From assembly GCA_002269645.1 (NCBI GenBank), contig NIVC01001518.1, positions 124,001 to 188,000 of the forward strand: a stretch of 64,000 nucleotides of DNA. The letters are read 5' to 3'. The notes beneath the pieces are model-generated. The model was not told the origin of the DNA and ran no database searches. It was given only the letters and a program-made list of their open reading frames with translations. The stretch is from Macrostomum lignano (taxonomy: Eukaryota). Shown here in pieces: positions 1,854-43,983 of this stretch. The translations under genes were made by a program, and so were the position numbers. The first letter of the stretch is position 1. The number at the start of each line of letters is the position of its first letter.

Positions 1854-2650
1854 TCAAGAAGACCACAGCTGAAGACAACGCTTAACACTGAACCAGACCG
1901 CAGCACCAGCAGCCGTACAGAAGGCCACATTCAGAACTGATCCGAAAAGTATAAATGAACCAATTTTACGTTGAAATTTTTGGTATCATTCACGCACGGG
2001 AATGGCACGTCCGGCACCGGTACATTCAAGAATTTGCACAACGGTTCCCAGCCGTCTGTGACTCTGAACACTAACAGGCGCTCCTTAGGAATAGTCCGAA
2101 TCACGGCTTCAGTGTGCCGATCAAAAGCGACAGCAAGTTCCTGGTCAGACATGCCTGGATTCATTCCCATTCTAGGGAACATTGCAGTTTGCAATTTGTC
2201 CATGTAATTGAAGCCAATTAGCCAGGCTATTGGGGGCAGGATGTGTTTGCCAGCTGATTGGGCCTTGTAAACTGTAGCCCGGACACTCTGCACCCAGCGT
2301 TCGGGCTCGCGGAGGCTAAGAATAAATTTGGCTTCAGGATAAATCTGCATCAACTCCGAATAGAAGTGAGCAGCTGGAAAGTCTGTGCAAGCTCGAAATT
2401 CGCTTAACATTTCGTCTGCGAGTTCTTTTGTGAGTCCTTCTGTAGCGGCTTTGAGCCACAGTTTCAAATGATGTCGCTTCTCCTCTATGATCACTTCCAT
2501 ATGGTAGCAGCGGCCGCCAAGCAGAATCTCTAGCGCCTTCATCTGCGAATTGGTGCCAGTTCGCATCAGGCCAGCGCCAATCACTATGGGGCCTGTTGAA
2601 GATTTCGATGCCTGAAAAAATAGCGTTGAATGCTTTGAGTTGTTAAACAT
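1854..2650 (-). CDS. Sulfotransferase copy 2, with a 1-nt frameshift near 1965 before the C-terminal hydrophobic tail
   Basis: ORF 1931-2650 has GLMRTGTNS, DFP, RxPxxW and DGWEPLC motifs. The homologous tail (FILFGSVLNVAFCTAAGAAVWFSVKRCLQLWSS*) lies in another frame ending at 1854. Confidence 0.8.
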
Positions 2651-6193: not shown

Positions 6194-8141
6194 AGCCTTC
6201 TATTGTATCGGTCAAGCAAACCTACGCAGACAGCACTTCACACCGAACCAGCAGCCTTCTATTGTATAGGTCAGGCAAACCTACGCAGACAGCACTTCAC
6301 ACCGAACCAGCAGCCTTCTATTGTATAGGTCAAGCAAACCTACGCAGACAGCACTTCAGACCAAACCAGCAGCCTTCTATTGTATAGGTCAAGCAAACCT
6401 ACGCAGACAGCACTTCAGACCAAACCAGCAGCCTTCTATTGTATAGGTCAAGCAAACCTACGCAGACAGCACTTCACACCGAACCAGCAGCCTTCTATTG
6501 TATAGGTCAGGCAAACCTACGCAGACAGCACTTCACACCGAACCAGCAGCCTTCTATTGTATAGGTCAGGCAAACCTACGCAGACAGCACTTCAGACCAA
6601 ACCAGCAGCCTTCTATTGTATAGGTCAAGCAAACCTACGCAGACAGCACTTCACACCGAACCAGCAGCCTTCTATTGTATAGGTCAAGCAAACCTACGCA
6701 GACAGCACTTCAGACCAAACCAGCAGCCTTCTATTGTATAGGTCAAGCAAACCTACGCAGACAGCACTTCAGACCAAACCAGCAGCCTTCTATTGTATAG
6801 GTCAAGCAAACCTACGCAGACAGCACTTCAGACCAAACCAGCAGCCTTCTATTGTATAGGTCAAGCAAACCTACGCAGACAGCACTTCAGACCAAACCAG
6901 CAGCCTTCATATTGTATCGGTCAAGCAAACCTACGCAGACAGCACTTCACACCGAACCAGCAGCCTTCTATTGTATAGGTCAAGCAAACCTACGCAGACA
7001 GCACTTCAGACCAAACCAGCAGCCTTCTATTGTATAGGTCAAGCAAACCTACGCAGACAGCACTTCAGACCGAACCAGCAGCCTTCTATTGTATAGGTCA
7101 AGCAAACCTACGCAGACAGCACTTCACACCAAACCAGCAGCCTTCTATTGTATAGGTCAAGCAAACCTACGCAGACAGCACTTCAGACCAAACCAGCAGC
7201 CTTCATATTGTATCGGTCAAGCAAACCTACGCAGACAGCACTTCACACCGAACCAGCAGCCTTCTATTGTATAGGTCAAGCAAACCTACGCAGACAGCAC
7301 TTCAGACCAAACCAGCAGCCTTCTATTGTATAGGTCAAGCAAACCTACGCAGACAGCACTTCAGACCAAACCAGCAGCCTTCTATTGTATAGGTCAAGCA
7401 AACCTACGCAGACAGCACTTCAGACCGAACCAGCAGCCTTCTATTGTATAGGTCAAGCAAACCTACGCAGACAGCACTTCAGACCAAACCAGCAGCCTTC
7501 TATTGTATAGGTCAAGCAAACCTACGCAGACAGCACTTCACACCGAACCAGCAGCCTTCTATTGTATAGGTCAAGCAAACCTACGCAGACAGCACTTCAC
7601 ACCGAACCAGCAGCCTTCTATTGTATAGGTCAAGCAAACCTACGCAGACAGCACTTCAGACCAAACCAGCAGCCTTCTATTGTATCGGTCAAGCAAACCT
7701 ACGCAGACAGCACTTCAGACCGAACCAGCAGCCTTCTATTGTATAGGTCAGGCAAACCTACGCAGACAGCACTTCACACCGAACCAGCAGCCTTCTATTG
7801 TATAGGTCAGGCAAACCTACGCAGACAGCACTTCAGACCAAACCAGCAGCCTTCTATTGTATAGGTCAAGCAAACCTACGCAGACAGCACTTCAGACCAA
7901 ACCAGCAGCCTTCTATTGTATAGGTCAAGCAAACCTACGCAGACAGCACTTCAGACCGAACCAGCAGCCTTCTATTGTATAGGTCAAGCAAACCTACGCA
8001 GACAGCACTTCAGACCAAACCAGCAGCCTTCTATTGTATAGGTCAAGCAAACCTACGCAGACAGCATTTCAGACCGAACCAGCAGCATTCATATTGTATC
8101 GGTCAAGCAAATCTACGCAGACAGCACTTCAGACCAAACCA
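6194..8141. repeat. Tandem array, 59-bp unit, ~33 copies, derived from the 3' end of sulfotransferase copy 4
   Basis: Unit AGCAGCCTTCTATTGTATAGGTCAAGCAAACCTACGCAGACAGCACTTCAGACCAAACC; its reverse complement encodes FGLKCCLRRFA*. Confidence 0.95.
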
Positions 8142-8879
8142 GACAGCAAGGCCCACAGCCGAGCAGAAGCCGAAATTAGCAAGAGCACTAATTGTGTAAA
8201 AGCCAATGGCTTTCTTCTGAAATTCAGCAGTATCATTCACATTTGGAAACGGTACATCGGGTACCGGCAGCTCCAGGAAGTTGCACAATGGTTCCCAACC
8301 ATCCGAAACTCGAAACACTAACAGTCGCTCTTTGGGAATAGTTCGAATCACCGCCTCGGTGTGACGGTTAAACGCTTCAATCAATTCTTTGTCTGTCATG
8401 TCCACTCGAATACCCAATCGCGAGTCGAAGATGTTGTGATGCAACGGCAGAAAGTAGGTCAGATTGAGAAGCCACAACGATGGGGCCAGCATACAACCCA
8501 TAGCCTTCATACCCTTAAAGATGGTACTGCGAACGCTCTCAACCCATCGTTGGGGATCGCGAACGCTCAGCACAAACTTGGCATTGGGATAAATCTTGAG
8601 TAGCTCAGGATAGAAAGCCGCTACAGGAAAGTCTGTTGTAGCAACAAAACCGTCAAAGATTTGGTCAGCCAGCTGTTTTGTTAAACCCTCTTTGGCAGCC
8701 TGATTCCACAGCTTCAAGTGGTGTCGCTTCTGTTTCATGATTACGAACATATGGTAGCACCGGCCGCCAAGCAGAATCTCCAGCGCCTTCATCTGCGAGT
8801 TGGTGCCAGTTCGCATCAGGCCAACACCAAACACCAATGGACCCGTAGTGGACTGTTGCAACTTGCTATCAAGAGACAT
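8103..8879 (-). CDS. Sulfotransferase copy 4, intact (258 aa from ATG 8879), C-terminal hydrophobic anchor
   Basis: Uninterrupted ORF with all family motifs. The track's 8981 start is a TTG; the first ATG is MSLDSK. Confidence 0.9.
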   Translation of the reverse strand: MSLDSKLQQSTTGPLVFGVGLMRTGTNSQMKALEILLGGRCYHMFVIMKQKRHHLKLWNQAAKEGLTKQLADQIFDGFVATTDFPVAAFYPELLKIYPNAKFVLSVRDPQRWVESVRSTIFKGMKAMGCMLAPSLWLLNLTYFLPLHHNIFDSRLGIRVDMTDKELIEAFNRHTEAVIRTIPKERLLVFRVSDGWEPLCNFLELPVPDVPFPNVNDTAEFQKKAIGFYTISALANFGFCSAVGLAVWFGLKCCLRRFA

Positions 8880-9964
8880 TGCGCTTGCTTGCGATTCAGT
8901 TGATGTTAAACAATAAAAAACGATAGCAGAAATAATTGCGCAAAGGTTACGCTTAGCTCTGAGGCACTGTGGTGGTCGCAACTCACACCCACGGATACTA
9001 GAATAACTAGACTAGATGGGCCACTCAGCAAATTTGCGTGTAAGCTACTTTCAGTTCAGTAGCAAGTTACACGGAAGAATTTTAATGTATTTTAAAAGAC
9101 AAGGTTTATTTATTGTCTCTTACACCCCCAAGCTTAAACCCTCAAACTCCACACGGAACCTCTACCCCCGCCCCACCGCCCAATTTTTATTACCCTACTC
9201 GGTTGTTCCAATCTAAAGCTGCCATGTACATATCAGTGGACTGGCTAATGTACATTATGGCTGAACCAATTAGCAAGCTGTTTACGCCTGCAAGCTTGGG
9301 CTTCTAAACTTATCGAAGTCATTTCAGCTGCCATTATTTTTATAAAATAACGTACGTATTCTTTATTGCTACTGAACTGAAAGTAGAAAGCTGTTTTACC
9401 AAGTATATATGACTGAGTGGCCCATTTAGTTATTCTAGTATCTGTGCTCACACCCAAAAAATTAATTTTCAACTTTTGGAGATAAAAACGTTCAAGTACG
9501 AATGCACTCGTACCAGACTTTTCAAAATCCATTTTTACTTTTATGAAGATTCTAAGATATACAGCTACATTTGAGCTGGGTGACGAACTTGCTTAAACCC
9601 TCGTAACTAACCAAGGCCAACTGTGCTTAACTTAATTCGCTAACACATGGAGGAACAAAACTTCAATGCAAAATGAGTGCTAGCTTGAAAAAAATTAGCA
9701 AAGAAATAACAAACAGACTAAAGATACACGTTTTATTAGTTTCCATTAGTAACTAGAAATAAAATGGACACGCTGTACTTTTTTTGCAAATTGTAAACTA
9801 AAATAATAACAGTATAGAATGGTATAATACCGTGACTAGGTATAGCAATGGAAATGAATAAATATTAACATATCTAGTGATAAAGAAATGCGCTAATTAT
9901 ATTGTGGTTTCTTTAAAATAGATTGTAACTATTCAGATTTTTACCGCGTAAAGTATTATTGGTT

Positions 9965-11201: not shown

Positions 11202-12026
11202 TCAACCAAACCGGCGCAGAGCGAACTTCAACCCAAACCAGACAATCGCCCCAGCAACCGAGCAGACAGCCAAATTAGTAGTGACACTGGCCATATCGAT
11301 GAAGTGAGCAAAGAACACAAACTCATTAGTGTCTTTAATATGCGGAAACGGTCGATCGGGCACAGGTACACCCAGGTAGCTGCACAGAGGCTCCCAACCA
11401 TCGGTGACTCGATAGATCAACAGTCGATCTTTAGGAATCGTTCTTTGTACAGCTTCAGCATGCCGTTCAAAAGCAGCGGTCATCTCCTCTTCAGTCATGT
11501 CAAAATTGAACACGAATCTAGATTGAAATATAGCATCGTGTAACAGTTGGAAGTAGCTGAGATCCCACAGCCACCGAGTCAAAGGTAACATCCGGCCCAC
11601 AGCTCGATAGACACGACCAATAGTGAGTTTCATGCTATTCGACCAACGCTTGGGATCGCGAAGGCTTAAAATGAACTTCGCCTCGGGATAAATCTGCGCC
11701 AACTCGGCGTAAAACATTGCCGTAGGAAAATCTGCTGCCGCAACAAAACCGTCAAATATTTGATCGGCTAGTTCTTTAGTCAGGCCCTGAGTAGCGGCTT
11801 TGTGCCACAGTTTGAAATGATCCCGCCTCTCAGACATTATCACCTGCATGTGATAGCAACGACCGTTTAGAAGTCTCTCCAAGGCTTTCATCTGCGAATT
11901 GGTGCCAGTTCGCATCAGGCCTGTGCATATCACTTTTGGCCCACCCTGCGACTGCTCACTTTGAGTATCCGGTTCTGTCATGAGTAGTTTCGATTTTTTT
12001 ATTGCTGGTCTGCTTTTGATTTGCAT
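11202..12026 (-). CDS. Sulfotransferase copy 5, intact, C-terminal hydrophobic anchor
   Basis: 274-aa ORF: ICTGLMRTGTNSQ, ADFP, LRDPKRW, DGWEPLC, tail VAGAIVWFGLKFALRRFG*. Start may be M1 or M16. Confidence 0.9.
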   Translation of the reverse strand: MQIKSRPAIKKSKLLMTEPDTQSEQSQGGPKVICTGLMRTGTNSQMKALERLLNGRCYHMQVIMSERRDHFKLWHKAATQGLTKELADQIFDGFVAAADFPTAMFYAELAQIYPEAKFILSLRDPKRWSNSMKLTIGRVYRAVGRMLPLTRWLWDLSYFQLLHDAIFQSRFVFNFDMTEEEMTAAFERHAEAVQRTIPKDRLLIYRVTDGWEPLCSYLGVPVPDRPFPHIKDTNEFVFFAHFIDMASVTTNLAVCSVAGAIVWFGLKFALRRFG

Positions 12027-19724: not shown

Positions 19725-22700
19725 TCAGATCACTAAATAGTTGAGCATCTTCTGCGGATCCAAAGCCTCGTAGATGTAAAGCGGATCTCGATGACCGTTG
19801 CGTGATTTAACTGTAGCGCTGGCCCTGGCCAATTCGTCTTTGAATCTGAAAAAAAATTGGAGTAATATTGTTTTCATCTACTGTAAGTAGAAATATAAGT
19901 AAAAAGCAACTATAAAAATTCCAGACAGAAAATTTTACTTTTAACATTGTTTTCATCTACCGTAAGTAGAAATATAAGTAAAAAGCAACTATAAAAATTC
20001 CAGACAGAAAATTTTACTTTTAACATTGTTTTCATCTACCGTAAGTAGAAATATAAGTAAAAAGCAACTAAAAAAATTCCAGACAAAAAATTTTACTTTC
20101 AACATTGTTTTCGTCTACTGTAAGTAGAAATATAAGTAAAAAGAGGCGAAACTCTTACTCTTGCAGGATTTGCATAGAGGCCTGGTCGTGGCTATATTGT
20201 AGCTCGTATTCGCCAAGCGGCTGTTCACCTTTCTGTCGCTGGCAAAGACGGAACGATAGCACGGTGTCGATGAACTCGCGACGGCAGGGTAGCGATTGCA
20301 GACTGGCCTCAAGAGGCTGCTCTTCCTTTAGGTGGTAAAGCAGCATTGGAGTATTGAAGTATATGTTAGTTTAGTGGTAGTTCAGGAGTGATTGTAAGGG
20401 TAGTTCAGGGGTGATTGCAAGGGTAGTTCAGGAGTGATTGTAAAGGTAGTTCAGGGGTGATTGCAAGGGTAGTTCAGGGGTGATTGTAAGGGTAGTTCAG
20501 GGGTGATTGTAAAGGTAGTTCAGGGTGATTGTAAAGGTAGTTCAGGGGTGATTGTAAAGGTAGTTCAGGGGTGATTGCAAGGGTAGTTCAGGGGTGATTG
20601 TAAGGGTAGTTCAGGGGTGATTGTAAAGGTAGTTCAGGGTGATTGTAAAGGTAGTTCAGGGGTGATTGCAAGGGTAGTTCAGGGGTGATTGCAAGGGTAG
20701 TTCAGGGGTGATTGTAAAGGTAGTTCAGGGTGATTGTAAGGGTAGTTCAGGGGTGATTGTAAGGGTAGTTCAGGGGTGATTGTAAAGGTAGTTCAGGGTG
20801 ATTGTAAGGGTAGTTCAGGGGTGATTGTAAGGGTAGTTCAGGGGCAATTGTAAGAATAGTTCAGGCGGATTTTGAGAGTAGTTCAGGGGTGATTGTAAGG
20901 GTAGTTCAGGAGTGATTGTAAGGGAAGTTCAGGGTTACAGCAATACAGCAAGGGTAGTTCAGGGGTGATTGTATGGGTAGTTCAGGAGTGATTGTAAGGG
21001 TAGTTCAGGGGTGATTGTAAAGGTAGTTCAGGGTGATTGTAAGGGTAGTTCAGGAGTGATCGTGGGGGTAGTTCAGGGGTGATTGTAAGAGTAGTTCAGG
21101 GGTGATTGTAAGGGTAGTTCAGGGTTACAGCAATACAGCAAGGGTAGTTCAGGGGTGATTGTATGGGTAGTCAGGAGTGATTGTAAGGGTAGTTCAGGGG
21201 TGATTGTAAAGGTAGTTCAGGCGGATTTTAAGAGTAGTTCAGGGGCTATTATCAAAATTAGGTAAGGACAATTACTATATTATAGAGTTACAAATTCAGT
21301 GATTAGATTAATTGAAGACAGTTTCAACCCGACTATGATTGCAGATGATGAATGTATTGGGGAATTTCTAAAAACTCTCTAAGCATAATATAGCACATGT
21401 ACAAACGCAAACCTGCGGATCCTGAGGCAGGCAGCCGTGCAGAGCCAGAGGATAGTTAGGCGGAAAGCCGTACTCATCGAACTGGGGCTGCCAGGCAGCA
21501 GAGCCGTGCACGCAGATCATGTACATCAGATTAGTGAGCAGCGGGATCAGCTCGTCAACGTGTTGAATGCCGGATTTGCCAGGCAAGCCTTTCAATCCGA
21601 GGCCGCCCTTCTCTAACGGGTTGGTCATCTCCGCCCACCAGCCCTGCAGCTCGATGTCCTCCATCAGCTTGCGCTTCATCGCCTCCATGGGATTGGCGTA
21701 GTACAGACGGGCCGCCTTGTCGCAGTGGCCAGCGATGGCCTTGTAGATCAGCATGGCGTCCTCACTGCGGGGAGGGGAGTTCCGTGATGAGACTGATGAT
21801 CTTGGGGGGGGGGGGGAGGGGAGGCGGCTGGCCCAGCAACTGGATATTTGGGATGCTGGCCCAGCAACTGAATGTTTGGGAGGCTGGCCCAGCAACTGTG
21901 GATCTGGGAGGCTGGCCCAGCAACTGAATATTTGGGAGGCTGGCTCAGCAACTAAATATTTTGGAGGCTGGCCCAGCAACTGAATATTTGGGAGGCTGGC
22001 CCAGCAACTGCGGATCTGGGAGGCTGGCCCAGCAACTGCGGATCTGGGAGGCTGGCCCAGCAACTGCGGATATAGGAGGCTGGCCCAGCAACTGATTATT
22101 TGGGAGGCTGGCTCAGCAACTGAATATCTGGGAGGCTGGCCCAGCAACTGCGGATCTGGGAGGCTGGCCCAGCAACTGCGGATCTGGGAGGCTGGCCCAG
22201 CAACTGCGGATATAGGAGGCTGGCCCAGCAACTGAATATTTGGGAGGCTGGCTCAGCAACTGAATATTTGGGAGGCTGGCCCAGCAACTGCGGATCTGGG
22301 AGACTGGCCCAGCAACTGAAGATCTGGGAGGCTGGCCCAGCAACTGAGGATCTGGGAGGCGGGAACAACTATCAGTTATGATATTACAGTTTTTTAGCCC
22401 TAAATTAGCTATTTCCCTCAGGTTTGTCAACAAAAGTTATGTTATAGCTAAAAAGTGAGCCTTGCACTCACCGATAAGGGTAACCGGGCAGCACATTCGA
22501 ATCATACACGCCGCGGTTCTCCAGCTCTCTGTAGATGTTAATCTGCTGATCAAATCGCCAGGCTTTAAAAGCCTTCTTCAACAGCTGCCGGATGCCCTTC
22601 CTAGACAGCTGAATGTTCTGAGCAATCCAGCCGCTATCGCTGAAGAACCACTCCTTCAGCTTGGCATTGACAGCCAGCAGGTGACGGAAGTGCGGAGCTA

Positions 22701-25326
22701 GCATCTGGTAGAGCGGATGCGACTGCGACAGATTCTTGCGCATAGTAACGTAGATACCCTCAAGGATGAGGTGATGCAGCAGGCGGTTAGCAACCAGGTG
22801 ATAGCAGGCATCCGTGAGGTTAAACCATAGCTTAGCCTGCAGCCAGGCGTGAGGACTATCGCTAGGCATGATCGGCGCGCCCTCCTCCATGCGCTGGTTG
22901 AGCTGAATTGCCAGGGGAACCAGCTGCAATCGTTCGGTCCAGAAGAACAGAGCAATTGGAGAGCAGAACTGCCTGCCATTCTTGCACTCGACTCCCTCCA
23001 TGATGCTGTAGTCAACTATAAACAGGCGCCTGGCGTCCAGGATGTGCTGCAGAGTCCAGCCTTCCAAATAGGGCTTCAACCATTCAACGGCTACGCCGAA
23101 ATTCTCTGGGATAGATTTGCAGACTTTGATTACGAACGGATTGCAGCCTTTGAGGCGTTGGGCACCGAACACGAGGTCGTGCTCAGGGCCGCTAGGATTG
23201 GCTGGCCAGCGCTGCACAGACAGCGGCTCCGTGATGCTGTGCGCACGGTAGTAAGTGGTCAGATCGTCAAAGCTGGTGAAGTGATCCACGCTGGCATAGT
23301 CCACGTCCAGGCCTTTGTTGTAGATGATCTCGTCCTTGGTCTTCTCGATGTTCCAGCGGGTGTCCTAGGAGATTTTGGGCGATTCTGTCAGGGTAAGATT
23401 CTGGGCGATTCTCTCAGGGTGAGATCTAGGGCGATTCTCTCACGGTGAGATCTAGGGCGATTCTCTCACGGTGAGATCTAGGGCGATTCTCTCACGGTGA
23501 GATCTAGGGCGATTCTCTCACGGTGAGATCCAGGGCGATTCTCTCAGGGTGAGATCCAGGGCGATTCTCTCACGGTGAGATCTAGGGCGATTCTCTCACG
23601 GTGAGATCCAGGGCGATTCTCTCACGGTGAGATCCAGGGCGATTCTCTCACGGTGAGATCTAGGGCGATTCTCTCACGGTGAGATTCAGGGCGATTCTTT
23701 CAGGGTGAGATTATGGGCGATTCTCTCAGGGTGAGATCCAGGGCGATTCTCTCACGGTGAGATCCAGGGCGATTCTCTCAGGGTGAGATTAGTATGGGCG
23801 ATTCTCTCAGTGACAGGGTCCAGGGCGATCCAGGGCGATTCTCTCAGTGACAGGGTCCAGGGCGATCCAGGGCGATTCTCTCAGGCTGAGATTATGGCAA
23901 TTCTCTCAGGGTGAGATTAGTATGGGCGATTCTCTCAGGGTGAGACAATGAGCGATTCACCTAAAATGAGATTAATGCGATTTCTCAAGGTGAGATCATA
24001 GGCGATTTTTAAAGACATTCTATTCTCTGGGGTAGAAAATGAGCAGTTTCTCAGGAAAGTATAATTGCAATACGGGAATCTTACAAACTGAGAATATAAA
24101 TAGGCATTTACACTAAATTAAACTGTTACCAACCTGGGAGAAAATTTCTTCGGCTGGCAAAGCCTGCAATTCCAGCGGCAGTCCGTTGGCCCGCTGATAG
24201 AACAGGAGATTGTTTCTGCGCTCGGATATCTCAGCGATGCGCTCGTCCGGCATGGGGTCGGCGGAAGGCAGCGACACCTGCGAGTGGTGCAGTGCATGCG
24301 TGCGTTTGAAATAATCAAGGGAGCTTTGAGCTTGAAGGGCGACTCTGAAGGGAGCTTTGAAGGGCGATTCTGAATGGAGATTCTGAAGGGAGCTCTGAAG
24401 GGCGATTCTGAAGGGAGCTCTGAAGGGCGATTCTGAAAGGAGCTTTGAAAGGCAATTCTGAAGGACGATTCTGAAAGGAGCTCTGAAGGGCGATTCTGAA
24501 GGACGATTCTGAAAGGAGCTCTGAAGGGCGATTCTGAAGGGAGCTTTGAAAGGCAATTCTGAAGGACGATTCTGAAGGGAGCTCTGAAGGGCGATTCTGA
24601 AAGGAGCTTTGAAGGGCAATTCTGAAGGGAGCTCTGAAGGGCGATTCTGAAAGGAGCTTTGAAAGGCAATTCTGAAGGACGATTCTGAAAGGAGCTCTGA
24701 AGGGCGATTCTGAAGGGAGCTTTGAAAGGCAATTCTGAAGGACGATTCTGAAGGGAGCTCTGAAGGGCGATTCTGAAAGGAGCTTTGAAGGGCAATTCTG
24801 AAGGGAGCTCTGAAGGGCGATTCTGAAGGACGATTCTGAAGGGAGCTCTGAATGGTAATTCTAAAGCCGATAAAACGACATGAAACCTGACAGTTGGAAA
24901 TGCTTGCTGACTTACCTGACAGTCAAATGAATAATAGTGCCTATCGGGATGAATCCATCTGTGCACAGGAAAGTACGAATAGAGCCACTTTCCGCCCAGG
25001 CCTTTGCGCCTGTCCCTAATAATAACCTTCTCGCAAAACCAATCATAATTAACATGTTCTACTCCAGGTTCCACTGAACGCCAGAATTCAATTTTTTGCA
25101 CCTTGCCAAAACCCTTCTTGCACCAGCTGGCCAGCGGTATGGTGAATTTGTCCCTAATACTGCCGTCCTCCTCTTGGAAGAAAGCGTTGCTCAGAGTGAA
25201 AGCTGGGGAGGCGTTACCATCTCGGTCATACAGGTGCAGCGTGATGGTGGGGCCCTGTTCGGCCACTTTGTAGTCGCCAGTCACTGAGCAGATTTCGAAA
25301 GCAATTTTTGACGATTTGGCACCCAT
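19725..25326 (-). CDS. PLAT + lipoxygenase-fold protein, 6 exons, 695 aa, degenerate iron ligands
   Basis: Exons 25326-24916, 24277-24134, 23364-22472, 21764-21413, 20325-20159 and 19845-19725 join in frame (2088 nt) with GT-AG ends. LOX motifs PIALF..LVPLAIQL, WLQAKLW, HPLYQMLAPH, YPYREDA, PNYP; C-terminus LNYLVI*. Confidence 0.92.
19866..20140. repeat. 79-bp tandem repeat (~3.5 copies) filling LOX intron 5
   Basis: ATTGTTTTC at 19867, 19946, 20025 and 20104. Confidence 0.9.
20385..21245. repeat. Minisatellite in LOX intron 4, 22-23-bp unit (GGGTAGTTCAGGGGTGATTGTAA)
   Basis: Direct periodicity. Confidence 0.95.
21825..22360. repeat. Minisatellite in LOX intron 3, 28-bp unit (GGGAGGCTGGCCCAGCAACTGCGGATCT / ...GAATATTT)
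   Basis: Direct periodicity with two unit variants. Confidence 0.95.
23380..23995. repeat. Minisatellite in LOX intron 2, 26-bp unit (AGGGCGATTCTCTCACGGTGAGATCT)
   Basis: Direct periodicity; internal palindrome TCTCAC-G-GTGAGA. Confidence 0.95.
24335..24850. repeat. Minisatellite in LOX intron 1, 25-bp unit built of 12/13-bp subunits (CTGAAGGGCGATTCTGAAGGGAGCT)
   Basis: Direct periodicity. Confidence 0.95.
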
Positions 25327-34510: not shown

Positions 34511-34769
34511 CGAGGTGGCGCTGGCGTCGATAGCAGTGGCGATACGGAATGGTGGCGTCCGTCGCAACTTCCAATCAAAAGTCAAAGGAGTGACTTCTCG
34601 AGCGCCTCGGATGACGATGACAACAACGGTGAATACTTCGGAGGCGATGGCGGCGCTGATGCTAATGAAGTAGGAGCAGACAATGCCAGCAGAGGCAGAA
34701 ACACCGACGGCTCGGAGTTTCAACGCTGGTGGCAGTAGCAGCAGCAGCAGCAGCAGCCACTACAGTGCA

Positions 34770-37335
34770 GTTAACCGGCTGTCCTTCTCTGCTGCCGACC
34801 GTCGCACCAACCGCCAAGCCCGCAAACTCCTCGGCAGGGCCGTCGCGACTGCCCCTCCGGAGCCTCCAATCTCCCAGGAGGAGCTGAATTCGGCGATCAC
34901 CCGGCTCCACGGCCGGGGAGCTGCCGGCCCCGACGATATTCCGCCGAGCTTCATCAAGGTGCTGGGACCCCGCGCCCGGGCCAACTTGCTGGACGTCTTC
35001 AAAGAGTCTCTGACGACTGGTGTGGTCCCGGCCCCCTGGAGGAAGGCCACCATCATCCCCCTGCTTAAACAGGGGAAACCTGCCAGTCGTATCGACAGCT
35101 TCCGGCCTGTCAGTTTGACGTCCTGCATCGTCAAGACCTTGGGGCGCATCATCTTCTGCCGACTCTACGACCTCACCGAGGCCTGCGGCTGGATCAGCTG
35201 CTGGCAATCTGGCTTCCGGCGCATGCGCTCCTGTGAGGACGCCATTCTCGAACTAACTCAGGCGATCAGCGATGGCTTTCAATCAAAGCCACACATCCGG
35301 ACGTTGCTGGCTCTCCTGGACTACAGCAGAGCCTACGACAGGGTGTGGCGGCAGATCCTGATCATGCTTGAACTTGGCGCCCCGCCCCAGCTGACTCGTT
35401 GGTGCTTCGCTTTCCTGAACGACCGCTGGGCGTCTACCTGCATCAACGGCGCCCTGAGCCACCCGCGGCCGCTTCGCCATGGCCTGCCCCAGGGCTCGGT
35501 GCTTGCGCCCTTTCTCTTCCTGCTGTTCATCGATGGCGTGGTCTGGGTGTGCCCGCCCAGAGTAGCTCCGTCCCTGTACGCCGACGACCTCGCTATCCGC
35601 GTCCAGAACAGCTCTGTGGCCGCGGCTACCAACTCCATCCAGGAGGGCCTCGACACGGTGGCCAGCTGGAGTCGTCAGATGAAGCTGACCCTGAACCACT
35701 CGAAGAGCGTCGTCACGCTGTTCACGAACTACACCAGCGAAGCCGGCCTTCAGCCCCAGATCCTGCTCGAGGGCACGCCTCTCGCCGTGGACCCCAATCC
35801 GCGCTTTCTCGGCGTCATCCTCGACAGGATGCTGAGCTTTGGCCCCCACGTCCGCGACGTCACCTCCAAGGCCCGCGCCCGCAGCGACGTCTTGGCCGCC
35901 TTGGGTAACCAGGACTGGGGCTGGCAAAAGGAGAAGCTTCGGACCGTCTTCAACGCGCTCATCAAATCTGTGCTGGACTACGCCGCAGCGGCCTGGCAGC
36001 CGTAGATCAGCGAATCGCACCGCGACGAGCTCGAACGGACCCAGAACCGTGCTCTCCGCCGCATTACTGGCCAACTGCAGACATCGCCCGCCGAGGCACT
36101 ACGGCTTGAGGCCGAAGTCACCTGCTACAAAATGCACGCTAAGCGCCTCCTCACGCGGTCGTGGGAGAAAGCGCTCCGGCTGCCCGCTGACCATCCGCTG
36201 CATCGTGCCGCCGCGGGGACCGCCATCCACCGCCTCGTGCGCCCCAGCTGGCGGCTTGCGGCCTCTCAGCTCAGCGAAGTCCTGCCGCCCAGCCTGGGCA
36301 ACCGCCATGCCGTTCTTTCCGCCGAGCGCTCCTACTCCCGTCCAGCCTACTTGCCGCCTCCGCAGATTCTGCCGCACCCTCCCGTTGTCCGTCACGCCTG
36401 CCGAACCTGACCTATGCCGCAGTGCCGCCACTGACTGCATCCGGGAGCTGGCGGCGTCGCTCTCCGCACCGGCCAGGACGGTGTACACCGACGCTCCGCC
36501 ACCGGGGGGACGCTTTCCGGAGGCCACGCTTTCGTGGTTACGGAGGGCGATCCGTCTGCCCCGATCGTCGTCCATGCCGAGGCCCGCCGCGGCTCGCCTA
36601 TTACGTCCAGCTTCGACGAGAAGGTCGCCGCCCTGTCTGCCGCCCTGAGTTGGGTCCACGCCCGAACCAGCGCCAACACTTCTCCCCCGTCCTTGGTCAT
36701 CTGCTCGGACAGCCGCAGCATGATAGATGCGCTCGCCGCCAACAACCGCGGCGTCGGCCATGCCCTGCAGGCGCTGGCCCTGACGGACGCGGACGTCATC
36801 CTCCAATGGGTGCCCAGCCATTGCGGCGTCCCCAGCAACGAGCACGCCGACCGCCGGGCCAAGGAGGGCTGCGCCTTGCCTTCTGCTGCCCCCGTGTCCT
36901 TCAACGCCGCCGCCGCTGTCTGCCGCAGAGTCCTCAGTGACCCGCCGGCGGCCCATGAGCGCACGCGGGAGGCTTACCGCCTCGTCTCTGCAGCCCGCGA
37001 TAGCGAGTCTATCTCCTTGCGAGCTGATCAAAGACTGCTCGCCCAGCTCCGCACCGGCCAATCCACGGCGCCCAGGGCATCTCATGCTGTCCTGAACCCG
37101 GCCGTGTCCGCCACTTGTACCCGGTGCGTCGAGGCGGACGACACTATCGACCACTGGCTCTGCGATTGCCCGGCCCTTTACACCAGGCGGACGTAGATTT
37201 TTGGTACTCCTCGGCCCCCGCTGTCGGTCCTTGGCTCGGATCCGGCCGGTGTGGTCGCACTGGCTCGCGCGACCTTGCGTCACGCGAGGTGCTAGCCTGC
37301 AGCAAAGCAAAGCAAAAGAAAAAGCAGAAGCAGCA
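34770..37335 (+). mobile_element. 5'-truncated non-LTR retrotransposon (I/Ingi-group-like): RT - RNase H - CCHC finger
   Basis: GPDDI, FRPVSLTS, QSGFR, GLPQGSVLAP, YADD, RFLGVILD; RNase H VYTD...CSDSRS...QWVPSHCG..NEHAD; CTRC..HWLCDC; GCAAA-rich tail; internal stop at 36003 and frameshifts. Confidence 0.92.
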
Positions 37336-39829: not shown

Positions 39830-42800
39830 TGTTAGTATCGGCTTGTGTGTGCGTCGGTATGCTGTCTTTGGCCAAACCCATAGAGTTGTAATGAGTGAAG
39901 GCAGCGCTAAAGAATAAATAAAAAAGAATGAAAGAAGGCAAAGTAAGCCGCGAGAGCATGCAGCTTGATTGTCAAGTGAAAGTGATTCAATAATCGACTC
40001 CGAGCTAACAATGGCGACGAGGCTGCCAACCATCGAACCGCTAGAAGAGAGCGAGGACCCCCACCGATGGCTGCAGCGATTCGAAATCTGCGCCACGCTG
40101 AATGACTGGAAAGACGACAAAAAGCGCAACGCTTTTCTGGCGCTGCTCGGCAAGCGAATTTTTAACCTCCTTGCTGATGCGGTGCTGCCCGATAAGTTGG
40201 ACACCAAGGACTTTGATACGCTCAGCAAGCTGCTCACCAAAGAGGTCAAAGGTGAGAAATCTGTGATTGCAAGCCGCTACGAGTTCCATAAAGCGAAGCA
40301 GGAGAACAATGAGGACATAGCCACTTACAGCAGGAGGCTGAAGCAGCTGTCCGAAGCCTGCAAATTTACCGATTTGGCCGACCGGCTCAGAGATCAGTTT
40401 ATCTTTGGACTCCAGAGTAAAGAGATTCTGCGGAAACTACTGTCTGAGAAAATCGAAGACCTGACGTGGGACAAGGTAACGGCGGTAGCTGCGGCTTGCG
40501 AAGCGGTCCAGCGTGGGGAGAAAGACATGACCGGCTTGAATGTACTGCAGATGCGTCAGACAAGTGGTCGACCGCAAAAAGGCAGCGAAGCCGGAAGGAA
40601 ACGTTCACAAAAACCCACGAGTGAGGACAAGAACGCCAAGCAGGTCACTTGCTACTGCTGTGGGAAACCTGGTCATCTAAAGAGTGAATGCCGATTCAAA
40701 TCCTTGAAGTGTGATAGCTGCGGAAAATTGGGTCACCTGAGATCTGTCTGCAGAGCTTCGAAGACAAAGGCCGAAAGACACCGAGAGTCTTCAAGGGTTC
40801 GACTAGTGCTGCAATCACCATCAATTGAGAAGTGTGAAGAGGATCAATGCGACAAGATATTCTCCATGACAACCAGCAAGCAGAGAATTTCGCGCACAGT
40901 AAGTATTAACGGCACAAGTGTTGAAATGGTGTTTGATACGGGTGCGGATGCCTCATTGGTATCCAAACACTCATTCGAACAACTGTCACAGAGGACAGAT
41001 GTTATGCCAGCCGACAGAACATTTAAGGACTATCAGGGCTGTGCAGTCCCGCTGTTTGGTAAGTCGATCGTCACAGTGCAGTTCAACGGCATCACAACAC
41101 AGCTTCCTATCTTCATCGTGGATCGGCCAGGAGCTCCGAACATCTATGGGCTTGAGTGGATGCACGCCCTTGAGCCGCACCTGAATATTTACCAGGTTAC
41201 GCATTTCGAAGCACATCTAGTTCTAAAGGACGAAGCCAGACCCGTGTTTCTCAAGCCAAGACCTACACCATACGGCATTCGAGAGAGTGTGAAACAGGAA
41301 CTGGACCGCCTGGAAAGTGAAGGAATTCTGAAGAAGATTGATCAGAGCGAATGGGCAACGCCGATTGTGGTTGTGAGAAAGCAGAGTGGAAAAATACGCA
41401 AATGCGGCGACTACAAGGTGACTGTCAACAAATCCCTATGCGATATGGTCTCAACCACCCCATGCATTGAAGATGTGTTGAGCCAGTTGGGTGGAGCCAA
41501 GATCTTCTCTGTTCTCGATCTGACGAACGCTTACCTACAGTTACCAGTAGACGATGCGTCTGGAAGCATCCTAACTCTGAGCACCCCTTTCGGGTTATAT
41601 CAGCCCAAAGCCCTTGCTTATGGTGTCAAACAGGCACCGGCAATTTTTCAGGGATATATGGACAAGCTATTAGCTTCGGAGAAAAATGTGGTCAGCTACC
41701 AGGACGACATCCTCATATATGGAAAAACGGAACAGGAACACGACGACCAAATTAACGTTGTTACACGCATCCTACAGGAAAACAATGTCGTGGTTAAATA
41801 TCAGAAAAGTGCACTCAAGCGCAGTAGAGTAAAGTTTCTGGGACTCGACATTGGCAGCGAAGGAATCTGTCCAGCAGAAGACAAGATGGAAGCCATACGG
41901 AGTTTAGCAGATCCAAGGTCTGTCAAGGAGCTTAGATCATTCCTGGGCCTGGCAGAGTTTTACTCCAGATTTATAAAAAATCTATCTACCATCAAAGAGC
42001 CTCTAGCGAAGCTCGTTCGACAGGATGAAGAGTGGTGATGGGGACCCATGGAACAGTCTGCGTGTCAGCTAATCAAGACTAGCATTTGTGAGTCGAAGGT
42101 CATTAAACCGTTTGATTCATCCGACTCAATTACAAGACTCACAACGGACGCCTCTCCTTACGGTCTTGGAGCAGTGCTTGAACAATCCAAAGAACCGGTC
42201 ATGTTTATATCGAAGACACTCAGTAAGCCGGAGCGTAACTATGCACAAATTGAGCGCGAGGCGCTGGGAATCATCTGGGCTGTTAAGCGTCTTCATAAAT
42301 ACTTGTATGCTCGAAAGTTTGTACTAGTGACGGATCATCATCCACTGAAGTATATATTTGATCCAGCAAAGTGACTCAACAGCCTGGCTAGTGCTAGAAT
42401 TCAGCGATGGGCGATCTCACTGGCATCGATAATGAGCAATTTGACGTCAGTACAGTTCAGGACACCGTACTCAACATGCCGGTGAATAAAAAAGAAATTC
42501 GCAGACAGTCGCTACGGGATCCAACAATGCGTAAGCTGTTTGCCCAAGTAAAACATGGATGGACGGTAAGGGGAAAGAATCAGTTGCCAGAATTTTCCCG
42601 GCTACAAAGAGAGTTCTCCATTGAAGATGGAATCTTGTATCGGGGAATTAGAACTATTATCCCCACTGTACTTCGTGATCAAGTGCTATGAACGCTTCAT
42701 GATGGGCATTTAGGAGCGGAGAAAATGAAATCTATTGCCCGACAGTGCGTATGGTGGCCATCAGTGGATGCGGACATTCAGCAGCGGGCAAAGGCATGCA

Positions 42801-43983
42801 AGGACTGCCAGCAGCAAAAAGATCATGCGAAGAGCGAATGGATTCCATGGCCACAGGAAACCGAGAAGTGGAGCCGAGTCCATATAGACTATGCTGGTCC
42901 ATTTAATAATGGAAAATAATGATTGACGCCTACAGTAAGTGGGCTGAGGTTCATCTGATGAGTTCCACTACAACGGAAGAAACTATTCTGCGTCTTCACC
43001 GCACATTCGCACAGGAAGGTGTGCCACTTACACTAGTGTCCGATAACGGACCACAATTTACGTCCAAGCATATGGAAAACTCGCTACAGTCAATCGGGTG
43101 TAAGCACATTCTAACACCACCATATCATCCGCGATCGAATGGACAAGCGGAGAGATTCGTCCGTGATCTAAAAAACCACCTCAGAGCAGCACAGCAGGAA
43201 AGCTGCATGCAGGCCAACATAGATCGATTCTTGCTGCAGTATCGGAATGCAAAGCACGCTGCCACAGGGAAATCTCCAGCTGAAATGATGCGTGGTCATT
43301 TATTGCGTGGCCCGATCACCCAACTGTCAAAGCAACCGGTGTGGGTCAAGGTCTACAATGATCACCAACGCAAATGGGCACCTGGAGTCGTCATCAACTC
43401 TGAAGGCAAGGCTATTGTTAATGTTGAAGGTGAAGATGGAGACATCTCGAGAAGGCACCTGGAGCAGATAAAACCAAGAGTTACCGACGCTAAAGAGGCC
43501 GAGGAAGATACAAGTCATAGAGTCATAGCGATTCAAAAGATCAAGCGCGCCCAGAAGACACTAATAAACGCTATCCTACTCGTAATCGAAGGCCGCCTGA
43601 TAGACTGCAGTACAAAAAACCCGGGACACCAACCAAACAGAGCTTAACGTGAATCCAAGCGTAGTTTGCAATGGAAAGCTACTCTTGTGAACTGATTGTG
43701 TACCTGTTGTTTTTATTTATTTATTTGAAAGCGTGTCTCCACCTCATTATGAAACCATGAGGTGCATTCTTTTAGAGTATTTTTTATCTCGCATGGGAGG
43801 AGTGTTAGTATCGGCTTGTGTGTGCGTCGGTATGCTGTCTTTGGCCAAACCCATAGAGTTGTAATGAGTGAAGGCAGCGCTAAAGAATAAATAAAAAAGA
43901 ATGAAAGAAGGCAAAGTAAGCCGCGAGAGCATGCAGCTTGATTGTCAAGTGAAAGTGATTCAATAATCGACTCCGAGCTAACA
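39830..43983 (+). mobile_element. Ty3/Gypsy (Mag-like) LTR retrotransposon, full length, ORF decayed
   Basis: Identical 181-bp LTRs (39830-40010, 43803-43983; TG..CA); TSD AATCG; PBS-like TGGCGACGAGG overlapping the gag ATG; PPT GGGAGGAG; two CCHC knuckles, DTGA protease, YQDD RT, RNase H, integrase; stops at 42036, 42372, 42689 and 42916 plus deletions. Confidence 0.97.

What the first reader, a model, noticed from the sequence alone, without database searches (positions are those of the whole stretch)
19725..25326. Intact, probably myristoylated lipoxygenase-fold protein that has lost most iron ligands (candidate pseudo-lipoxygenase)
Seen: an uninterrupted 695-aa spliced ORF. The canonical H-Q-x3-H-L-L-R-T-H-L-x2-E reads H-L-V-A-N-R-L-L-H-H-L-I-L-E: the first Fe-His (5-LOX H367) becomes Arg and one residue is deleted. 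The canonical Q-H-A-A-V-N-F-G-Q reads H-G-S-A-A-W-Q-P-Q, so H550 becomes Gly and N554 becomes Trp. The H372 equivalent and the C-terminal Ile are kept. The N-terminus MGAKSSK fits the N-myristoylation consensus. Known: Fe-LOX use H-x4-H spacing on a pi-helix; fungal Mn-LOX use H-x3-H. Inference: a catalytically dead lipid-binding or regulatory LOX (Arg might replace the metal and pair with the Ile carboxylate), or a rebuilt metal site using the two new neighbouring His residues.
Basis: partly seen in the sequence, partly recalled or inferred. Interest (0 to 1): 0.72.

Follow-up and report, generated by a model that had tools for sequence, protein, structure and literature searches.

The report
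Flatworm lipoxygenase relative without metal site
This intact Macrostomum lignano gene belongs to a conserved flatworm group (flukes and tapeworms included) of lipoxygenase-shaped proteins that lack three of the five metal-binding residues, so the "arachidonate 5-lipoxygenase" label on the fluke and tapeworm copies is probably wrong as an enzyme name.

Summary
A six-exon, all GT-AG gene on the minus strand (25326-19725) encodes a 695-aa PLAT + lipoxygenase protein. It is 100% identical to Macrostomum lignano BOX15_Mlig014613g1.

Family alignments put Arg379 at the first iron-binding His, followed by a one-residue deletion. Gly570 sits at the third His and Trp574 at the Asn. His383 and the C-terminal Ile695 are kept.

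This is a clade trait, not a one-off. All 17 full-length flatworm orthologues (Macrostomum, trematodes, cestodes) have R / deletion / H / G / R-or-W / C-terminal I-or-V. A partial monogenean sequence covers only the first three of these positions and agrees.

The clade is under purifying selection. dN/dS is about 0.10 between the two Macrostomum paralogues. Protein identity is 48% between Macrostomum and Schistosoma.

Two substrate-channel determinants are also replaced: the Coffa Gly/Ala becomes Leu, and the invariant Leu is lost.

The AlphaFold model is confident (pLDDT 87.5) and matches solved lipoxygenases (TM 0.82-0.86).

Best reading: a conserved, probably N-myristoylated, metal-free pseudo-lipoxygenase. 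Its positive function is unknown. No paper describing it was found.

The parts
19725..25326 (-). Whole coding region of the lipoxygenase-like gene (695 aa; M. lignano Mlig014613g1), six exons
   Evidence: Spliced model with all-GT/AG introns. It is 100% identical to the NCBI protein.
24916..25326 (-). Exon 1 (aa 1-137): MGAKSSK N-terminus and PLAT beta-sandwich
   Evidence: strands E8-134. The N-myristoylation pattern is matched.
25306..25326 (-). Codons 1-7, M-G-A-K-S-S-K: candidate N-myristoylation signal (Gly2, Ser6, Lys7)
   Evidence: MGxxx[ST]K in 18/18 flatworm sequences. pLDDT is below 50 for residues 1-5.
24134..24277 (-). Exon 2 (aa 138-185), linker between PLAT and the catalytic domain
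22472..23364 (-). Exon 3 (aa 186-482), N-terminal half of the lipoxygenase domain, including the helix that carries the first two ligand positions
   Evidence: helix 356-396, pLDDT 95-96.
22759..22800 (-). Motif 1, H374..E387: non-ligand His374 kept, Arg379 in place of the first iron His, a one-residue deletion after L381, lineage-specific His382, and His383 (second iron His) kept
22645..22659 (-). Arched-helix positions L421 (Coffa Gly/Ala site, 8R-LOX G427) and F425 (8R-LOX L431)
   Evidence: Residue mapping from the alignment; column counts.
21413..21764 (-). Exon 4 (aa 483-600), including the helix that carries the third His and the Asn positions
   Evidence: helix 552-580.
21482..21508 (-). 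Motif 2, H569-G570-S-A-A-W574-Q-P-Q577: Gly in place of the third iron His, Trp in place of the ligand Asn
20159..20325 (-). Exon 5 (aa 601-655)
19725..19845 (-). Exon 6 (aa 656-695 plus stop), ending in Ile695, whose carboxylate is the fifth ligand in canonical enzymes
   Evidence: C-terminal I/V in 17/17 full-length flatworm sequences.
19846..24915 (-). Span holding the five introns (24915-24278, 24133-23365, 22471-21765, 21412-20326, 20158-19846); each is mostly a private minisatellite array

Best explanation
The gene encodes a full-length animal-type lipoxygenase fold: an N-terminal PLAT beta-sandwich plus a helical catalytic domain. It can no longer hold the catalytic iron.

**State of the metal site.** Of the five ligands, only the second His (H383) and the C-terminal carboxylate (I695) remain.
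- The first His is Arg.
- The third His is Gly.
- The Asn is Trp here and Arg in parasitic flatworms.
- One residue has been deleted between the first two ligand positions. This changes the i/i+5 spacing to the i/i+4 spacing of a plain alpha-helix.

**Evolution.** These changes arose once, before Macrostomum and the parasitic flatworms (flukes, tapeworms, a monogenean) split. They have been held fixed since then under purifying selection.

**What the protein is.** It is a pseudo-lipoxygenase with a conserved non-dioxygenase role.

**Most likely working, by inference.**
- The Arg side chain or chains occupy the former metal position and neutralise the buried C-terminal carboxylate, which keeps the fold stable without metal.
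- The conserved MGxxx[S/T]K N-terminus is myristoylated. Together with the PLAT domain it holds the protein on a membrane.
- There it acts as a lipid-binding or protein-scaffolding module rather than as an oxygenase.

**Shown:** the gene model, the fold, the ligand substitutions, their fixation across the clade, and the selective constraint.

**Inferred:** no metal, no dioxygenase activity, the Arg-carboxylate pairing, myristoylation, and a membrane or lipid role.

**Confidence by part.** About 0.85 that it is a conserved protein without canonical dioxygenase activity. About 0.5 for the Arg-carboxylate pairing. About 0.5 for myristoylation. About 0.3 for a specific lipid-binding or scaffold role. 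The overall figure of 0.7 refers to the pseudo-lipoxygenase reading as a whole.
For: **Gene and identity.** An intact spliced ORF is identical to an annotated M. lignano protein. Three near-identical copies (g1-g3) and a 77% paralogue all carry the same motifs.

**Fold.**
- Pfam finds PLAT plus Lipoxygenase.
- The best solved relatives are coral 8R-LOX and 11R-LOX and human 5-LOX.
- The AlphaFold2 model has pLDDT 87.5 and pTM 0.89, with pLDDT 90-96 around both motifs.
- Foldseek gives TM 0.82-0.86 to 8R-LOX, 11R-LOX and 5-LOX.

**Ligand columns across the clade.**

| Position | Flatworm | Canonical relatives |
|---|---|---|
| His1 | R in 17/17 full-length (also in partial P0019) | H |
| Residue after His1 | deleted in 17/17 | G |
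| His2 | H | H |
| His3 | G in 17/17 | H |
| Asn | W in 2, R in 15 | N |
| C-terminus | I or V in 17/17 | mostly I |

**Other catalytic determinants.**
- The Coffa Gly/Ala site is Leu, Ile or Phe in 18/18 flatworm sequences.
- The invariant channel Leu (8R-LOX L431) is Thr, Met, Ile, Phe or Val.

**Constraint.**
- dN/dS is 0.10 between the two Macrostomum paralogues, although dS is about 1.4 and therefore saturated.
- Identity is 48% between Macrostomum and Schistosoma and 58% between Schistosoma and Echinococcus. Flatworm versus canonical is only 33-37%, while canonical relatives from different phyla are 52-54% alike.
- This pattern is a long stem branch followed by conservation.

**No rebuilt site.** H382 and H569 are not conserved.

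**Cationic replacement recurs.** Arg or Lys sits at a ligand position in several other ligand-degenerate lipoxygenase lineages: Lingula, amphioxus, the sponge Sycon and Ciona.

**N-terminus.** MGxxx[ST]K occurs in 18/18 flatworm sequences.
Against: - There is no direct evidence on metal content, activity, lipidation or expression. No transcript-derived copy of this exact protein was on record in the databases searched (one search lists NCBI and UniRef sources only).
- Bulky replacements at the Coffa site and loss of the channel Leu may mean that the fatty-acid channel is filled. That would weaken the lipid-binding part of the proposal.
- Adult Schistosoma mansoni extracts are reported to have lipoxygenase activity giving a 15-HETE-like product (PMC8718004; PMC12825244). 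No canonical flatworm lipoxygenase turned up here. That leaves some room for an unorthodox activity of this protein.
- The five cestode N-termini (MGE...) fail the PROSITE-type myristoylation pattern.
- His-to-Arg is a single-nucleotide change, so recurrent Arg may be partly mutational.
Confidence: 0.7

Rival explanations
1. It is still a metal-dependent oxygenase with a rebuilt centre. In the Macrostomum protein, H383, the neighbouring H382 and/or H569, and the I695 carboxylate form a new site of the 2-His-1-carboxylate type.
For: - H382 and H569 lie directly next to canonical ligand positions.
- A pairwise alignment can even place H569 on the canonical His.
- Lipoxygenase activity is reported in schistosome extracts, and no canonical flatworm lipoxygenase was found.
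Against: - H569 is Gln in the 77% paralogue and Ala/Thr/Ser in the 15 trematode and cestode sequences.
- H382 is Thr or Asn in the 15 trematode and cestode sequences and the partial monogenean.
- The residues that are conserved at the site are Arg, Gly and Arg/Trp. These are not metal ligands.
- The Coffa site and the channel Leu are also changed.
Confidence: 0.06
2. It has become a different kind of enzyme. It would use the old cavity and the new Arg, His or Cys residues for metal-free chemistry on lipids, such as isomerisation, hydrolysis or lyase action on oxidised lipids.
For: - Conservation is strong at and around the former active site, including clade-specific invariant residues (R379, C372, G570, S571, K422).
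- The stem branch is long and is followed by tight conservation. This is the pattern expected for a change of function.
Against: - No catalytic motif of any other family was detected; Pfam finds only PLAT and Lipoxygenase.
- No precedent was found in the literature searches.
- Conservation at a former active site is equally expected if those residues merely stabilise the fold.
Confidence: 0.12
3. It is a decaying pseudogene, or an artefact of assembly or annotation.
For: Ligand loss is what a dying enzyme gene would show. All the introns are repeat arrays, which could mislead gene callers.
Against: - The 695-codon ORF is uninterrupted and has consensus splice sites.
- The same residues occur in three near-identical copies and in one diverged paralogue.
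- dN/dS is 0.10.
- Orthologues of the same length with the same substitutions occur in trematodes and cestodes, plus a partial monogenean sequence; these make up about 18 clusters at 90% identity.
Confidence: 0.01

Closest known systems
Coral 8R-lipoxygenase (Plexaura homomalla AOS-LOX, PDB 2fnq/3fg1/4qwt) and Gersemia 11R-lipoxygenase (3vf1)
   Same: - Best sequence matches in the PDB: E 3e-54 for the single protein and 2e-69 for the flatworm profile.
- Best structural matches, TM 0.82-0.86 over the full length.
- Same PLAT plus helical-domain architecture, and the WL.AK, HP...L..PH and DEYGF motifs are kept.
   Different: The 8R-LOX ligands are H384, H389, H570, N574 and I693. Here the equivalent residues are R379, H383, G570, W574 and I695, with a one-residue deletion between the first two. 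The Coffa Gly427 corresponds to Leu421 and Leu431 to Phe425. Overall identity is only about 24%.
Human arachidonate 5-lipoxygenase (ALOX5, PDB 3o8y), the name under which the parasite orthologues are annotated
   Same: Same fold (TM 0.83-0.86) and same domain order.
   Different: The equivalents of ligands H367, H550 and N554 are Arg, Gly and Trp/Arg. The enzyme name is therefore unlikely to describe the function.
Canonical 'AOS-LOX-like / 5-LOX-like' lipoxygenases of other invertebrates (for example the nemerteans Tubulanus XP_074651881 and Lineus, and bivalves)
   Same: Closest relatives by sequence (34-37% identity). They have similar length, often an MG N-terminus, and the same Trp at the 8R-LOX I437 position.
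   Different: They keep H/H/H/N plus a C-terminal Ile and are 52-54% identical across phyla. The flatworm clade sits on a long branch and has lost three ligands.
Carbonic anhydrase-related proteins (for example CA-RP VIII): conserved pseudoenzymes of a metalloenzyme family in which a zinc-binding His is replaced, in CA-RP VIII by Arg. This comparison rests on my own knowledge and was not tested here.
   Same: The logic is the same: a metal-binding His becomes Arg, the fold and strong conservation are kept, and the protein is thought to act by binding partners rather than by catalysis.
   Different: The fold and metal are unrelated. The parallel is an analogy only.
Other ligand-degenerate lipoxygenase homologues found here (Lingula XP_013388118, amphioxus XP_035681464 and XP_019638280, Tubulanus XP_074652900, Tropilaelaps OQR69394, Sycon XP_065186429, Ciona savignyi H2YSA1)
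   Same: They have lost one or more metal ligands. Lingula and one amphioxus group also show the one-residue deletion in the same helix. Several have Arg or Lys at a ligand position.
   Different: For those checked, the nearest relative (outside near-identical copies) is either a canonical lipoxygenase or another degenerate one, never the flatworm clade. The losses are therefore independent of the flatworm one. None of them was shown here to be conserved across a phylum.

Membership tests
Lipoxygenase superfamily (fold, Pfam PF00305 + PF01477) | Significant match to the lipoxygenase catalytic-domain profile and an N-terminal PLAT domain | tested here: met
   PF00305 E 1.5e-41 (143 bits against a cut-off of 23.6) and PF01477 E 3.5e-8.
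Lipoxygenase superfamily (fold, Pfam PF00305 + PF01477) | Three-dimensional fold of animal lipoxygenases | tested here: met
   AlphaFold2 pLDDT 87.5, pTM 0.89. Foldseek TM 0.82-0.86 to 8R-LOX, 11R-LOX and 5-LOX. This is a predicted model, not a solved structure.
Catalytically competent iron/manganese lipoxygenase (EC 1.13.11.-) | First metal-binding His (8R-LOX H384 / 5-LOX H367) | tested here: not met
   It is Arg379 here and Arg in 17/17 full-length flatworm orthologues.
Catalytically competent iron/manganese lipoxygenase (EC 1.13.11.-) | Second metal-binding His (8R-LOX H389), five residues after the first | tested here: inconclusive
   His383 is present and invariant, but the spacing is shortened by one residue in the whole clade.
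Catalytically competent iron/manganese lipoxygenase (EC 1.13.11.-) | Third metal-binding His (8R-LOX H570 / 5-LOX H550) | tested here: not met
   It is Gly570 here and Gly in 17/17. The adjacent His569 is lineage-specific.
Catalytically competent iron/manganese lipoxygenase (EC 1.13.11.-) | Fourth-position ligand Asn/His/Ser (8R-LOX N574) | tested here: not met
   It is Trp574 here, and Arg in the 15 trematode and cestode sequences.
Catalytically competent iron/manganese lipoxygenase (EC 1.13.11.-) | C-terminal Ile/Val whose carboxylate binds the metal | tested here: met
   The protein ends ...LVI; I or V in 17/17. Whether the carboxylate is buried was not testable.
Catalytically competent iron/manganese lipoxygenase (EC 1.13.11.-) | Small residue (Gly/Ala) at the Coffa site and the invariant channel Leu (8R-LOX G427, L431) | tested here: not met
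   They are Leu421 and Phe425 here. The flatworm clade has L/I/F and T/M/I/F/V at these two positions, whereas canonical relatives have G/A in 13/14 and L in 13/14.
Catalytically competent iron/manganese lipoxygenase (EC 1.13.11.-) | Bound Fe or Mn and dioxygenase activity | not testable with these tools
   This needs recombinant protein, metal analysis and an activity assay.
Pseudoenzyme (conserved catalytically inactive homologue) | Loss of essential catalytic residues combined with purifying selection and conservation across species | tested here: met
   Three of five ligands are lost in all orthologues. dN/dS is 0.10. Identity is 48-58% across the flatworm classes sampled. Actual inactivity was not measured.
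N-myristoylated proteins | Met-Gly start, small uncharged residue at position 3, Ser/Thr at position 6, no Pro at position 7 | tested here: met
   MGAKSSK fits the pattern. 13 of 18 flatworm sequences fit it, and the five cestodes have Glu3. An in-frame stop 4 codons upstream fixes the start.
N-myristoylated proteins | Covalent myristate on Gly2 | not testable with these tools
   This needs metabolic labelling or mass spectrometry.

The most novel reading that the evidence does not exclude
The flatworm clade may be the only lipoxygenase homologue that these animals have, and it may still be responsible for the lipoxygenase-type products reported from schistosome extracts. In that case it would oxygenate or rearrange polyunsaturated lipids at a centre that lacks the canonical metal ligands, either metal-free or with a new ligand set. 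That would be a new catalytic solution on the lipoxygenase fold, and a parasite-specific one.
Probability: 0.07. Interest if true: 0.9.

Novelty: new variant of a known kind. Interest (0 to 1): 0.6.

Why it matters
1. **A well-supported pseudoenzyme branch.** The lipoxygenase family would gain a pseudoenzyme branch with fixed replacement residues. It is a natural experiment in what the fold does, and how it stays folded, without its metal. It includes loss of the extra residue that creates the i/i+5 ligand spacing.
2. **Annotation and an old puzzle.** Flukes and tapeworms of medical and veterinary importance carry this gene under the name "arachidonate 5-lipoxygenase". If it is inactive, that annotation misleads pathway reconstructions. 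The old question of which enzyme makes the HETE- and leukotriene-like lipids reported from schistosomes would also stay open. It could then be tested directly: express this protein and assay it.
3. **A tractable model.** The gene is conserved, apparently flatworm-restricted, and present in a free-living laboratory species (Macrostomum lignano) where RNAi is practicable. Its real function can therefore be studied.
4. **A wider pattern.** Similar ligand-degenerate lipoxygenase homologues turned up in at least seven other animal lineages. Non-catalytic use of this fold may be common and overlooked.

Tried and rejected
**Alignment of motif 2.** The pairwise phmmer alignment to 8R-LOX placed H569 on the canonical third His through an indel. 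I rejected this in favour of the gap-free family and profile alignments, because H569 is not conserved.

**Literature.**
- Nine full-text searches found no paper on ligand loss in flatworm lipoxygenase homologues and none mentioning Mlig014613.
- Only reviews repeating the report of lipoxygenase activity in S. mansoni extracts turned up.
- The library lacks most subscription journals, so prior description cannot be excluded.

**Model coordinates.** I looked for them in order to measure the R379-I695 distance and the cavity volume. None were exposed.

**Canonical flatworm lipoxygenase.** I searched for one. None appeared among the 68 hits to the query. None appeared among the 78 of the best 120 hits (out of 480) to a canonical nemertean enzyme that carry an organism name. 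None appeared in the profile search. This is absence of evidence only.

**Further clade members.** I looked for planarian, polyclad or other additional clade members. The 50%-identity representative library holds only three representatives of the clade, and the profile search added nothing.

**Second copy in the window.** I checked whether the window holds a second lipoxygenase copy. It does not.

**Transcript support.** I considered testing this through the assembly look-up. The protein is on record only from NCBI genome contigs, so I did not pursue it.

Full report
**1. The observation**

The region 19725-25326 carries a minus-strand gene. Reading the open segments and the junctions gives six exons: 25326-24916, 24277-24134, 23364-22472, 21764-21413, 20325-20159 and 19845-19725. 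All five introns begin GT and end AG. The 2088-nt CDS translates to 695 aa plus a stop. An in-frame TAA lies four codons upstream of the ATG.

The protein is 100% identical to NCBI PAA67451.1, 'hypothetical protein BOX15_Mlig014613g1' of the free-living flatworm Macrostomum lignano. The window therefore comes from that genome, and my model equals the deposited one.

I verified the codons for R379, H382, H383, H569, G570 and W574 in the raw sequence.

**2. What it is**

- Pfam finds PLAT (residues 15-131) and Lipoxygenase (248-674, E 1.5e-41).
- The best solved relatives are coral 8R-lipoxygenase, Gersemia 11R-lipoxygenase, human 15-LOX-2 and 5-LOX.
- An AlphaFold2 model built on a 32-sequence alignment is confident: mean pLDDT 87.5, pTM 0.89, and pLDDT 90-96 around both motifs.
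- The model superposes on those structures over its full length with TM 0.82-0.86.

**3. The ligand positions**

In the printed alignment to 8R-LOX, the chain index is residue number + 3. With that offset the alignment reproduces the published ligand numbers H384, H389, H570 and N574, which fixes the mapping.

- R379 aligns with H384. One residue is missing after L381. H383 aligns with H389. The MAFFT family alignment and a flatworm-profile alignment to 11R-LOX agree on this.
- For the second motif, the family and profile alignments are gap-free from the motif to the conserved DEYGF. They put G570 on the third His and W574 on the Asn.
- The single-sequence phmmer alignment instead shifts H569 onto the His by adding an indel. 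H569 is Gln in the paralogue and Ala/Thr/Ser in the other flatworms, so that shift is an artefact of one lineage-specific residue.

Two of the five ligands remain: H383 and the C-terminal carboxylate.

**4. It is a clade, not a one-off**

The homology search returned three groups:

- a 77% paralogue in M. lignano (Mlig001506g7);
- orthologues at 42-49% identity from trematodes (Schistosoma, Heterobilharzia, Trichobilharzia, Fasciolopsis, Paragonimus, Opisthorchis, Dicrocoelium, Calicophoron), cestodes (Echinococcus, Hymenolepis, Hydatigera, Mesocestoides, Spirometra) and a monogenean (Cichlidogyrus);
- canonical lipoxygenases of nemerteans, molluscs and other groups at about 30-36%.

Many of the parasite proteins are named 'arachidonate 5-lipoxygenase'.

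In all 17 full-length flatworm sequences the ligand columns read R / deletion / H / G / R-or-W / C-terminal I-or-V. The partial monogenean sequence shows R, the deletion and H in the part it covers. The canonical relatives read H / G / H / H / N / I.

Two further determinants are also replaced:

- The Coffa Gly/Ala position (8R-LOX G427) is Leu, Ile or Phe in 18/18 flatworm sequences.
- The invariant channel Leu (8R-LOX L431) is Thr, Met, Ile, Phe or Val.

The second-sphere Gln (Q577) is kept in Macrostomum but is Met in the parasites.

A profile search of 1.84 billion representatives and a profile search of the named database found no further members of the clade. They also found no planarian or other free-living representatives.

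**5. Selection**

I rebuilt the paralogue's CDS from its locus L001 and aligned it by codon.

- Nei-Gojobori dN is 0.142 and dS about 1.38, giving dN/dS of about 0.10. By region it is 0.04 in PLAT and 0.11 in the catalytic domain. dS is saturated, so the ratio is approximate, but it is far from 1.
- At the protein level, Macrostomum versus Schistosoma is 48% identical and Schistosoma versus Echinococcus is 58%.
- Flatworm versus the canonical nemertean enzyme is only 33-37%, although canonical enzymes from different phyla are 52-54% alike.

This is the pattern of a burst of change on the stem of the clade followed by long conservation. The replacement residues themselves (R379, G570, S571) are invariant.

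**6. Mechanism**

*Shown:* the fold is kept, three ligands and two channel determinants are replaced, and the replacements are fixed.

*Inferred:*

- With one His and one carboxylate left, and Arg, Gly and Arg/Trp at the other positions, the site cannot hold the catalytic iron. The protein is therefore not a dioxygenase. I put this at about 0.85.
- The Arg at the first His position, joined by a second Arg at the Asn position in the parasites, most likely fills the metal's place and balances the buried C-terminal carboxylate. Retention of the C-terminal I/V fits that. So does the recurrence of Arg or Lys at ligand positions in other degenerate lineages. No coordinates were available to test it.
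- The one-residue deletion turns the i/i+5 ligand spacing into i/i+4, which is what a regular alpha-helix would need to keep both side chains on one face. The same deletion accompanies ligand loss in Lingula and in one amphioxus group.
- The N-terminus MGxxx[S/T]K is invariant in the clade and is disordered in the model. This is consistent with N-myristoylation and, together with the PLAT domain, with membrane attachment.

The positive function remains open: lipid binding, scaffolding or new chemistry. The bulky residue at the Coffa site warns that the old fatty-acid channel may be partly filled.

**7. Rivals**

- *A rebuilt metal site.* This is unlikely, because the candidate His residues are not conserved.
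- *A decaying pseudogene or an artefact.* This is excluded.
- *A new metal-free enzymatic function.* This cannot be excluded. The reported lipoxygenase activity of schistosome extracts (PMC8718004; PMC12825244), together with the absence of any canonical flatworm lipoxygenase in my searches, keeps it alive at low probability.

**8. Comparison and novelty**

By fold and ancestry, this is a member of the lipoxygenase superfamily. It fails four of the defining features of a catalytically competent lipoxygenase and is inconclusive on a fifth (ligand spacing), so it should not be filed as an arachidonate lipoxygenase.

It behaves like the conserved pseudoenzymes of other metalloenzyme families. Carbonic anhydrase-related proteins, where a zinc His is replaced by Arg, are the closest analogy that I know of; I did not test that here.

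No paper describing this was found in nine searches of the held library, which lacks most subscription journals. I rate it a new variant of a known kind. It is of moderate to good interest, mainly for pseudoenzyme biology and for the annotation and lipid-mediator biology of parasitic flatworms.

Noticed in passing
window 19846-24915 (introns 24915-24278, 24133-23365, 22471-21765, 21412-20326, 20158-19846); L001 3303-8389: Every intron of the gene is almost entirely a minisatellite array with its own unit (periods 25, 26, 28, 23 and 79 bp). The paralogue's introns are also arrays (periods 29, 23, 16 and 26 bp), but with different unit sequences, even in the introns that occupy the same position.
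   Followed up: partly
window exon 1/2 and 2/3 junctions (24916/24277, 24134/23364) compared with L001 3302/4319 and 4681/5281: The two Macrostomum paralogues (77% identical proteins) share their last three intron positions but differ in the first two. The window gene has introns after codons 137 and 185. The paralogue has them after about codons 105 and 225 in window numbering. This implies intron gain and loss, or sliding, since the duplication.
   Followed up: partly
Proteins P0219, P0175/P0200, P0121, P0109, P0133, P0045/P0113, P0145/P0137, P0238, P0047, P0115, P0230: Ligand-degenerate lipoxygenase homologues also exist in a brachiopod (Lingula), amphioxus (two groups), a nemertean (Tubulanus), a mite and a tick, a sponge (Sycon), Ciona savignyi and Saccoglossus, plus unnamed clusters. 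None of those checked has the flatworm clade as nearest relative; the neighbours are canonical enzymes or other degenerate ones. The losses therefore look independent of the flatworm one. Lingula and one amphioxus group share the one-residue deletion.
   Followed up: partly
N-termini of canonical invertebrate lipoxygenases (P0020, P0021, P0029, P0037, P0038, P0044, P0097 and others): Many canonical relatives also begin MG and fit the N-myristoylation pattern (8 of 13 checked). Some have Cys residues right after the Gly (MGCCF, MGNCCG), as in dually acylated proteins. A lipid anchor may be an ancestral feature of this invertebrate lipoxygenase group.
   Followed up: partly
window 1931-2650, 8103-8981, 11202-12026 (all minus strand): Three ORFs match the Sulfotransfer_4 domain (E about 1e-62 to 1e-64). 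They form a small tandem family downstream of the lipoxygenase-like gene (which is on the minus strand).
   Followed up: no
window 34683-36005, 39969-43647, 50710-55096: There are retrotransposon remains: reverse transcriptase, gag-type aspartyl protease, zinc knuckle, integrase core and Pao-type peptidase. They include a GC-rich (about 62-63%) block at 34-38 kb.
   Followed up: no
L001 8553-32742: The annotated model of the paralogue Mlig001506g7 takes its last exon from 24 kb downstream. That exon is only about 52% identical to the window protein's, against 62-80% for the other exons. The 3' end of that model may be mis-joined.
   Followed up: no
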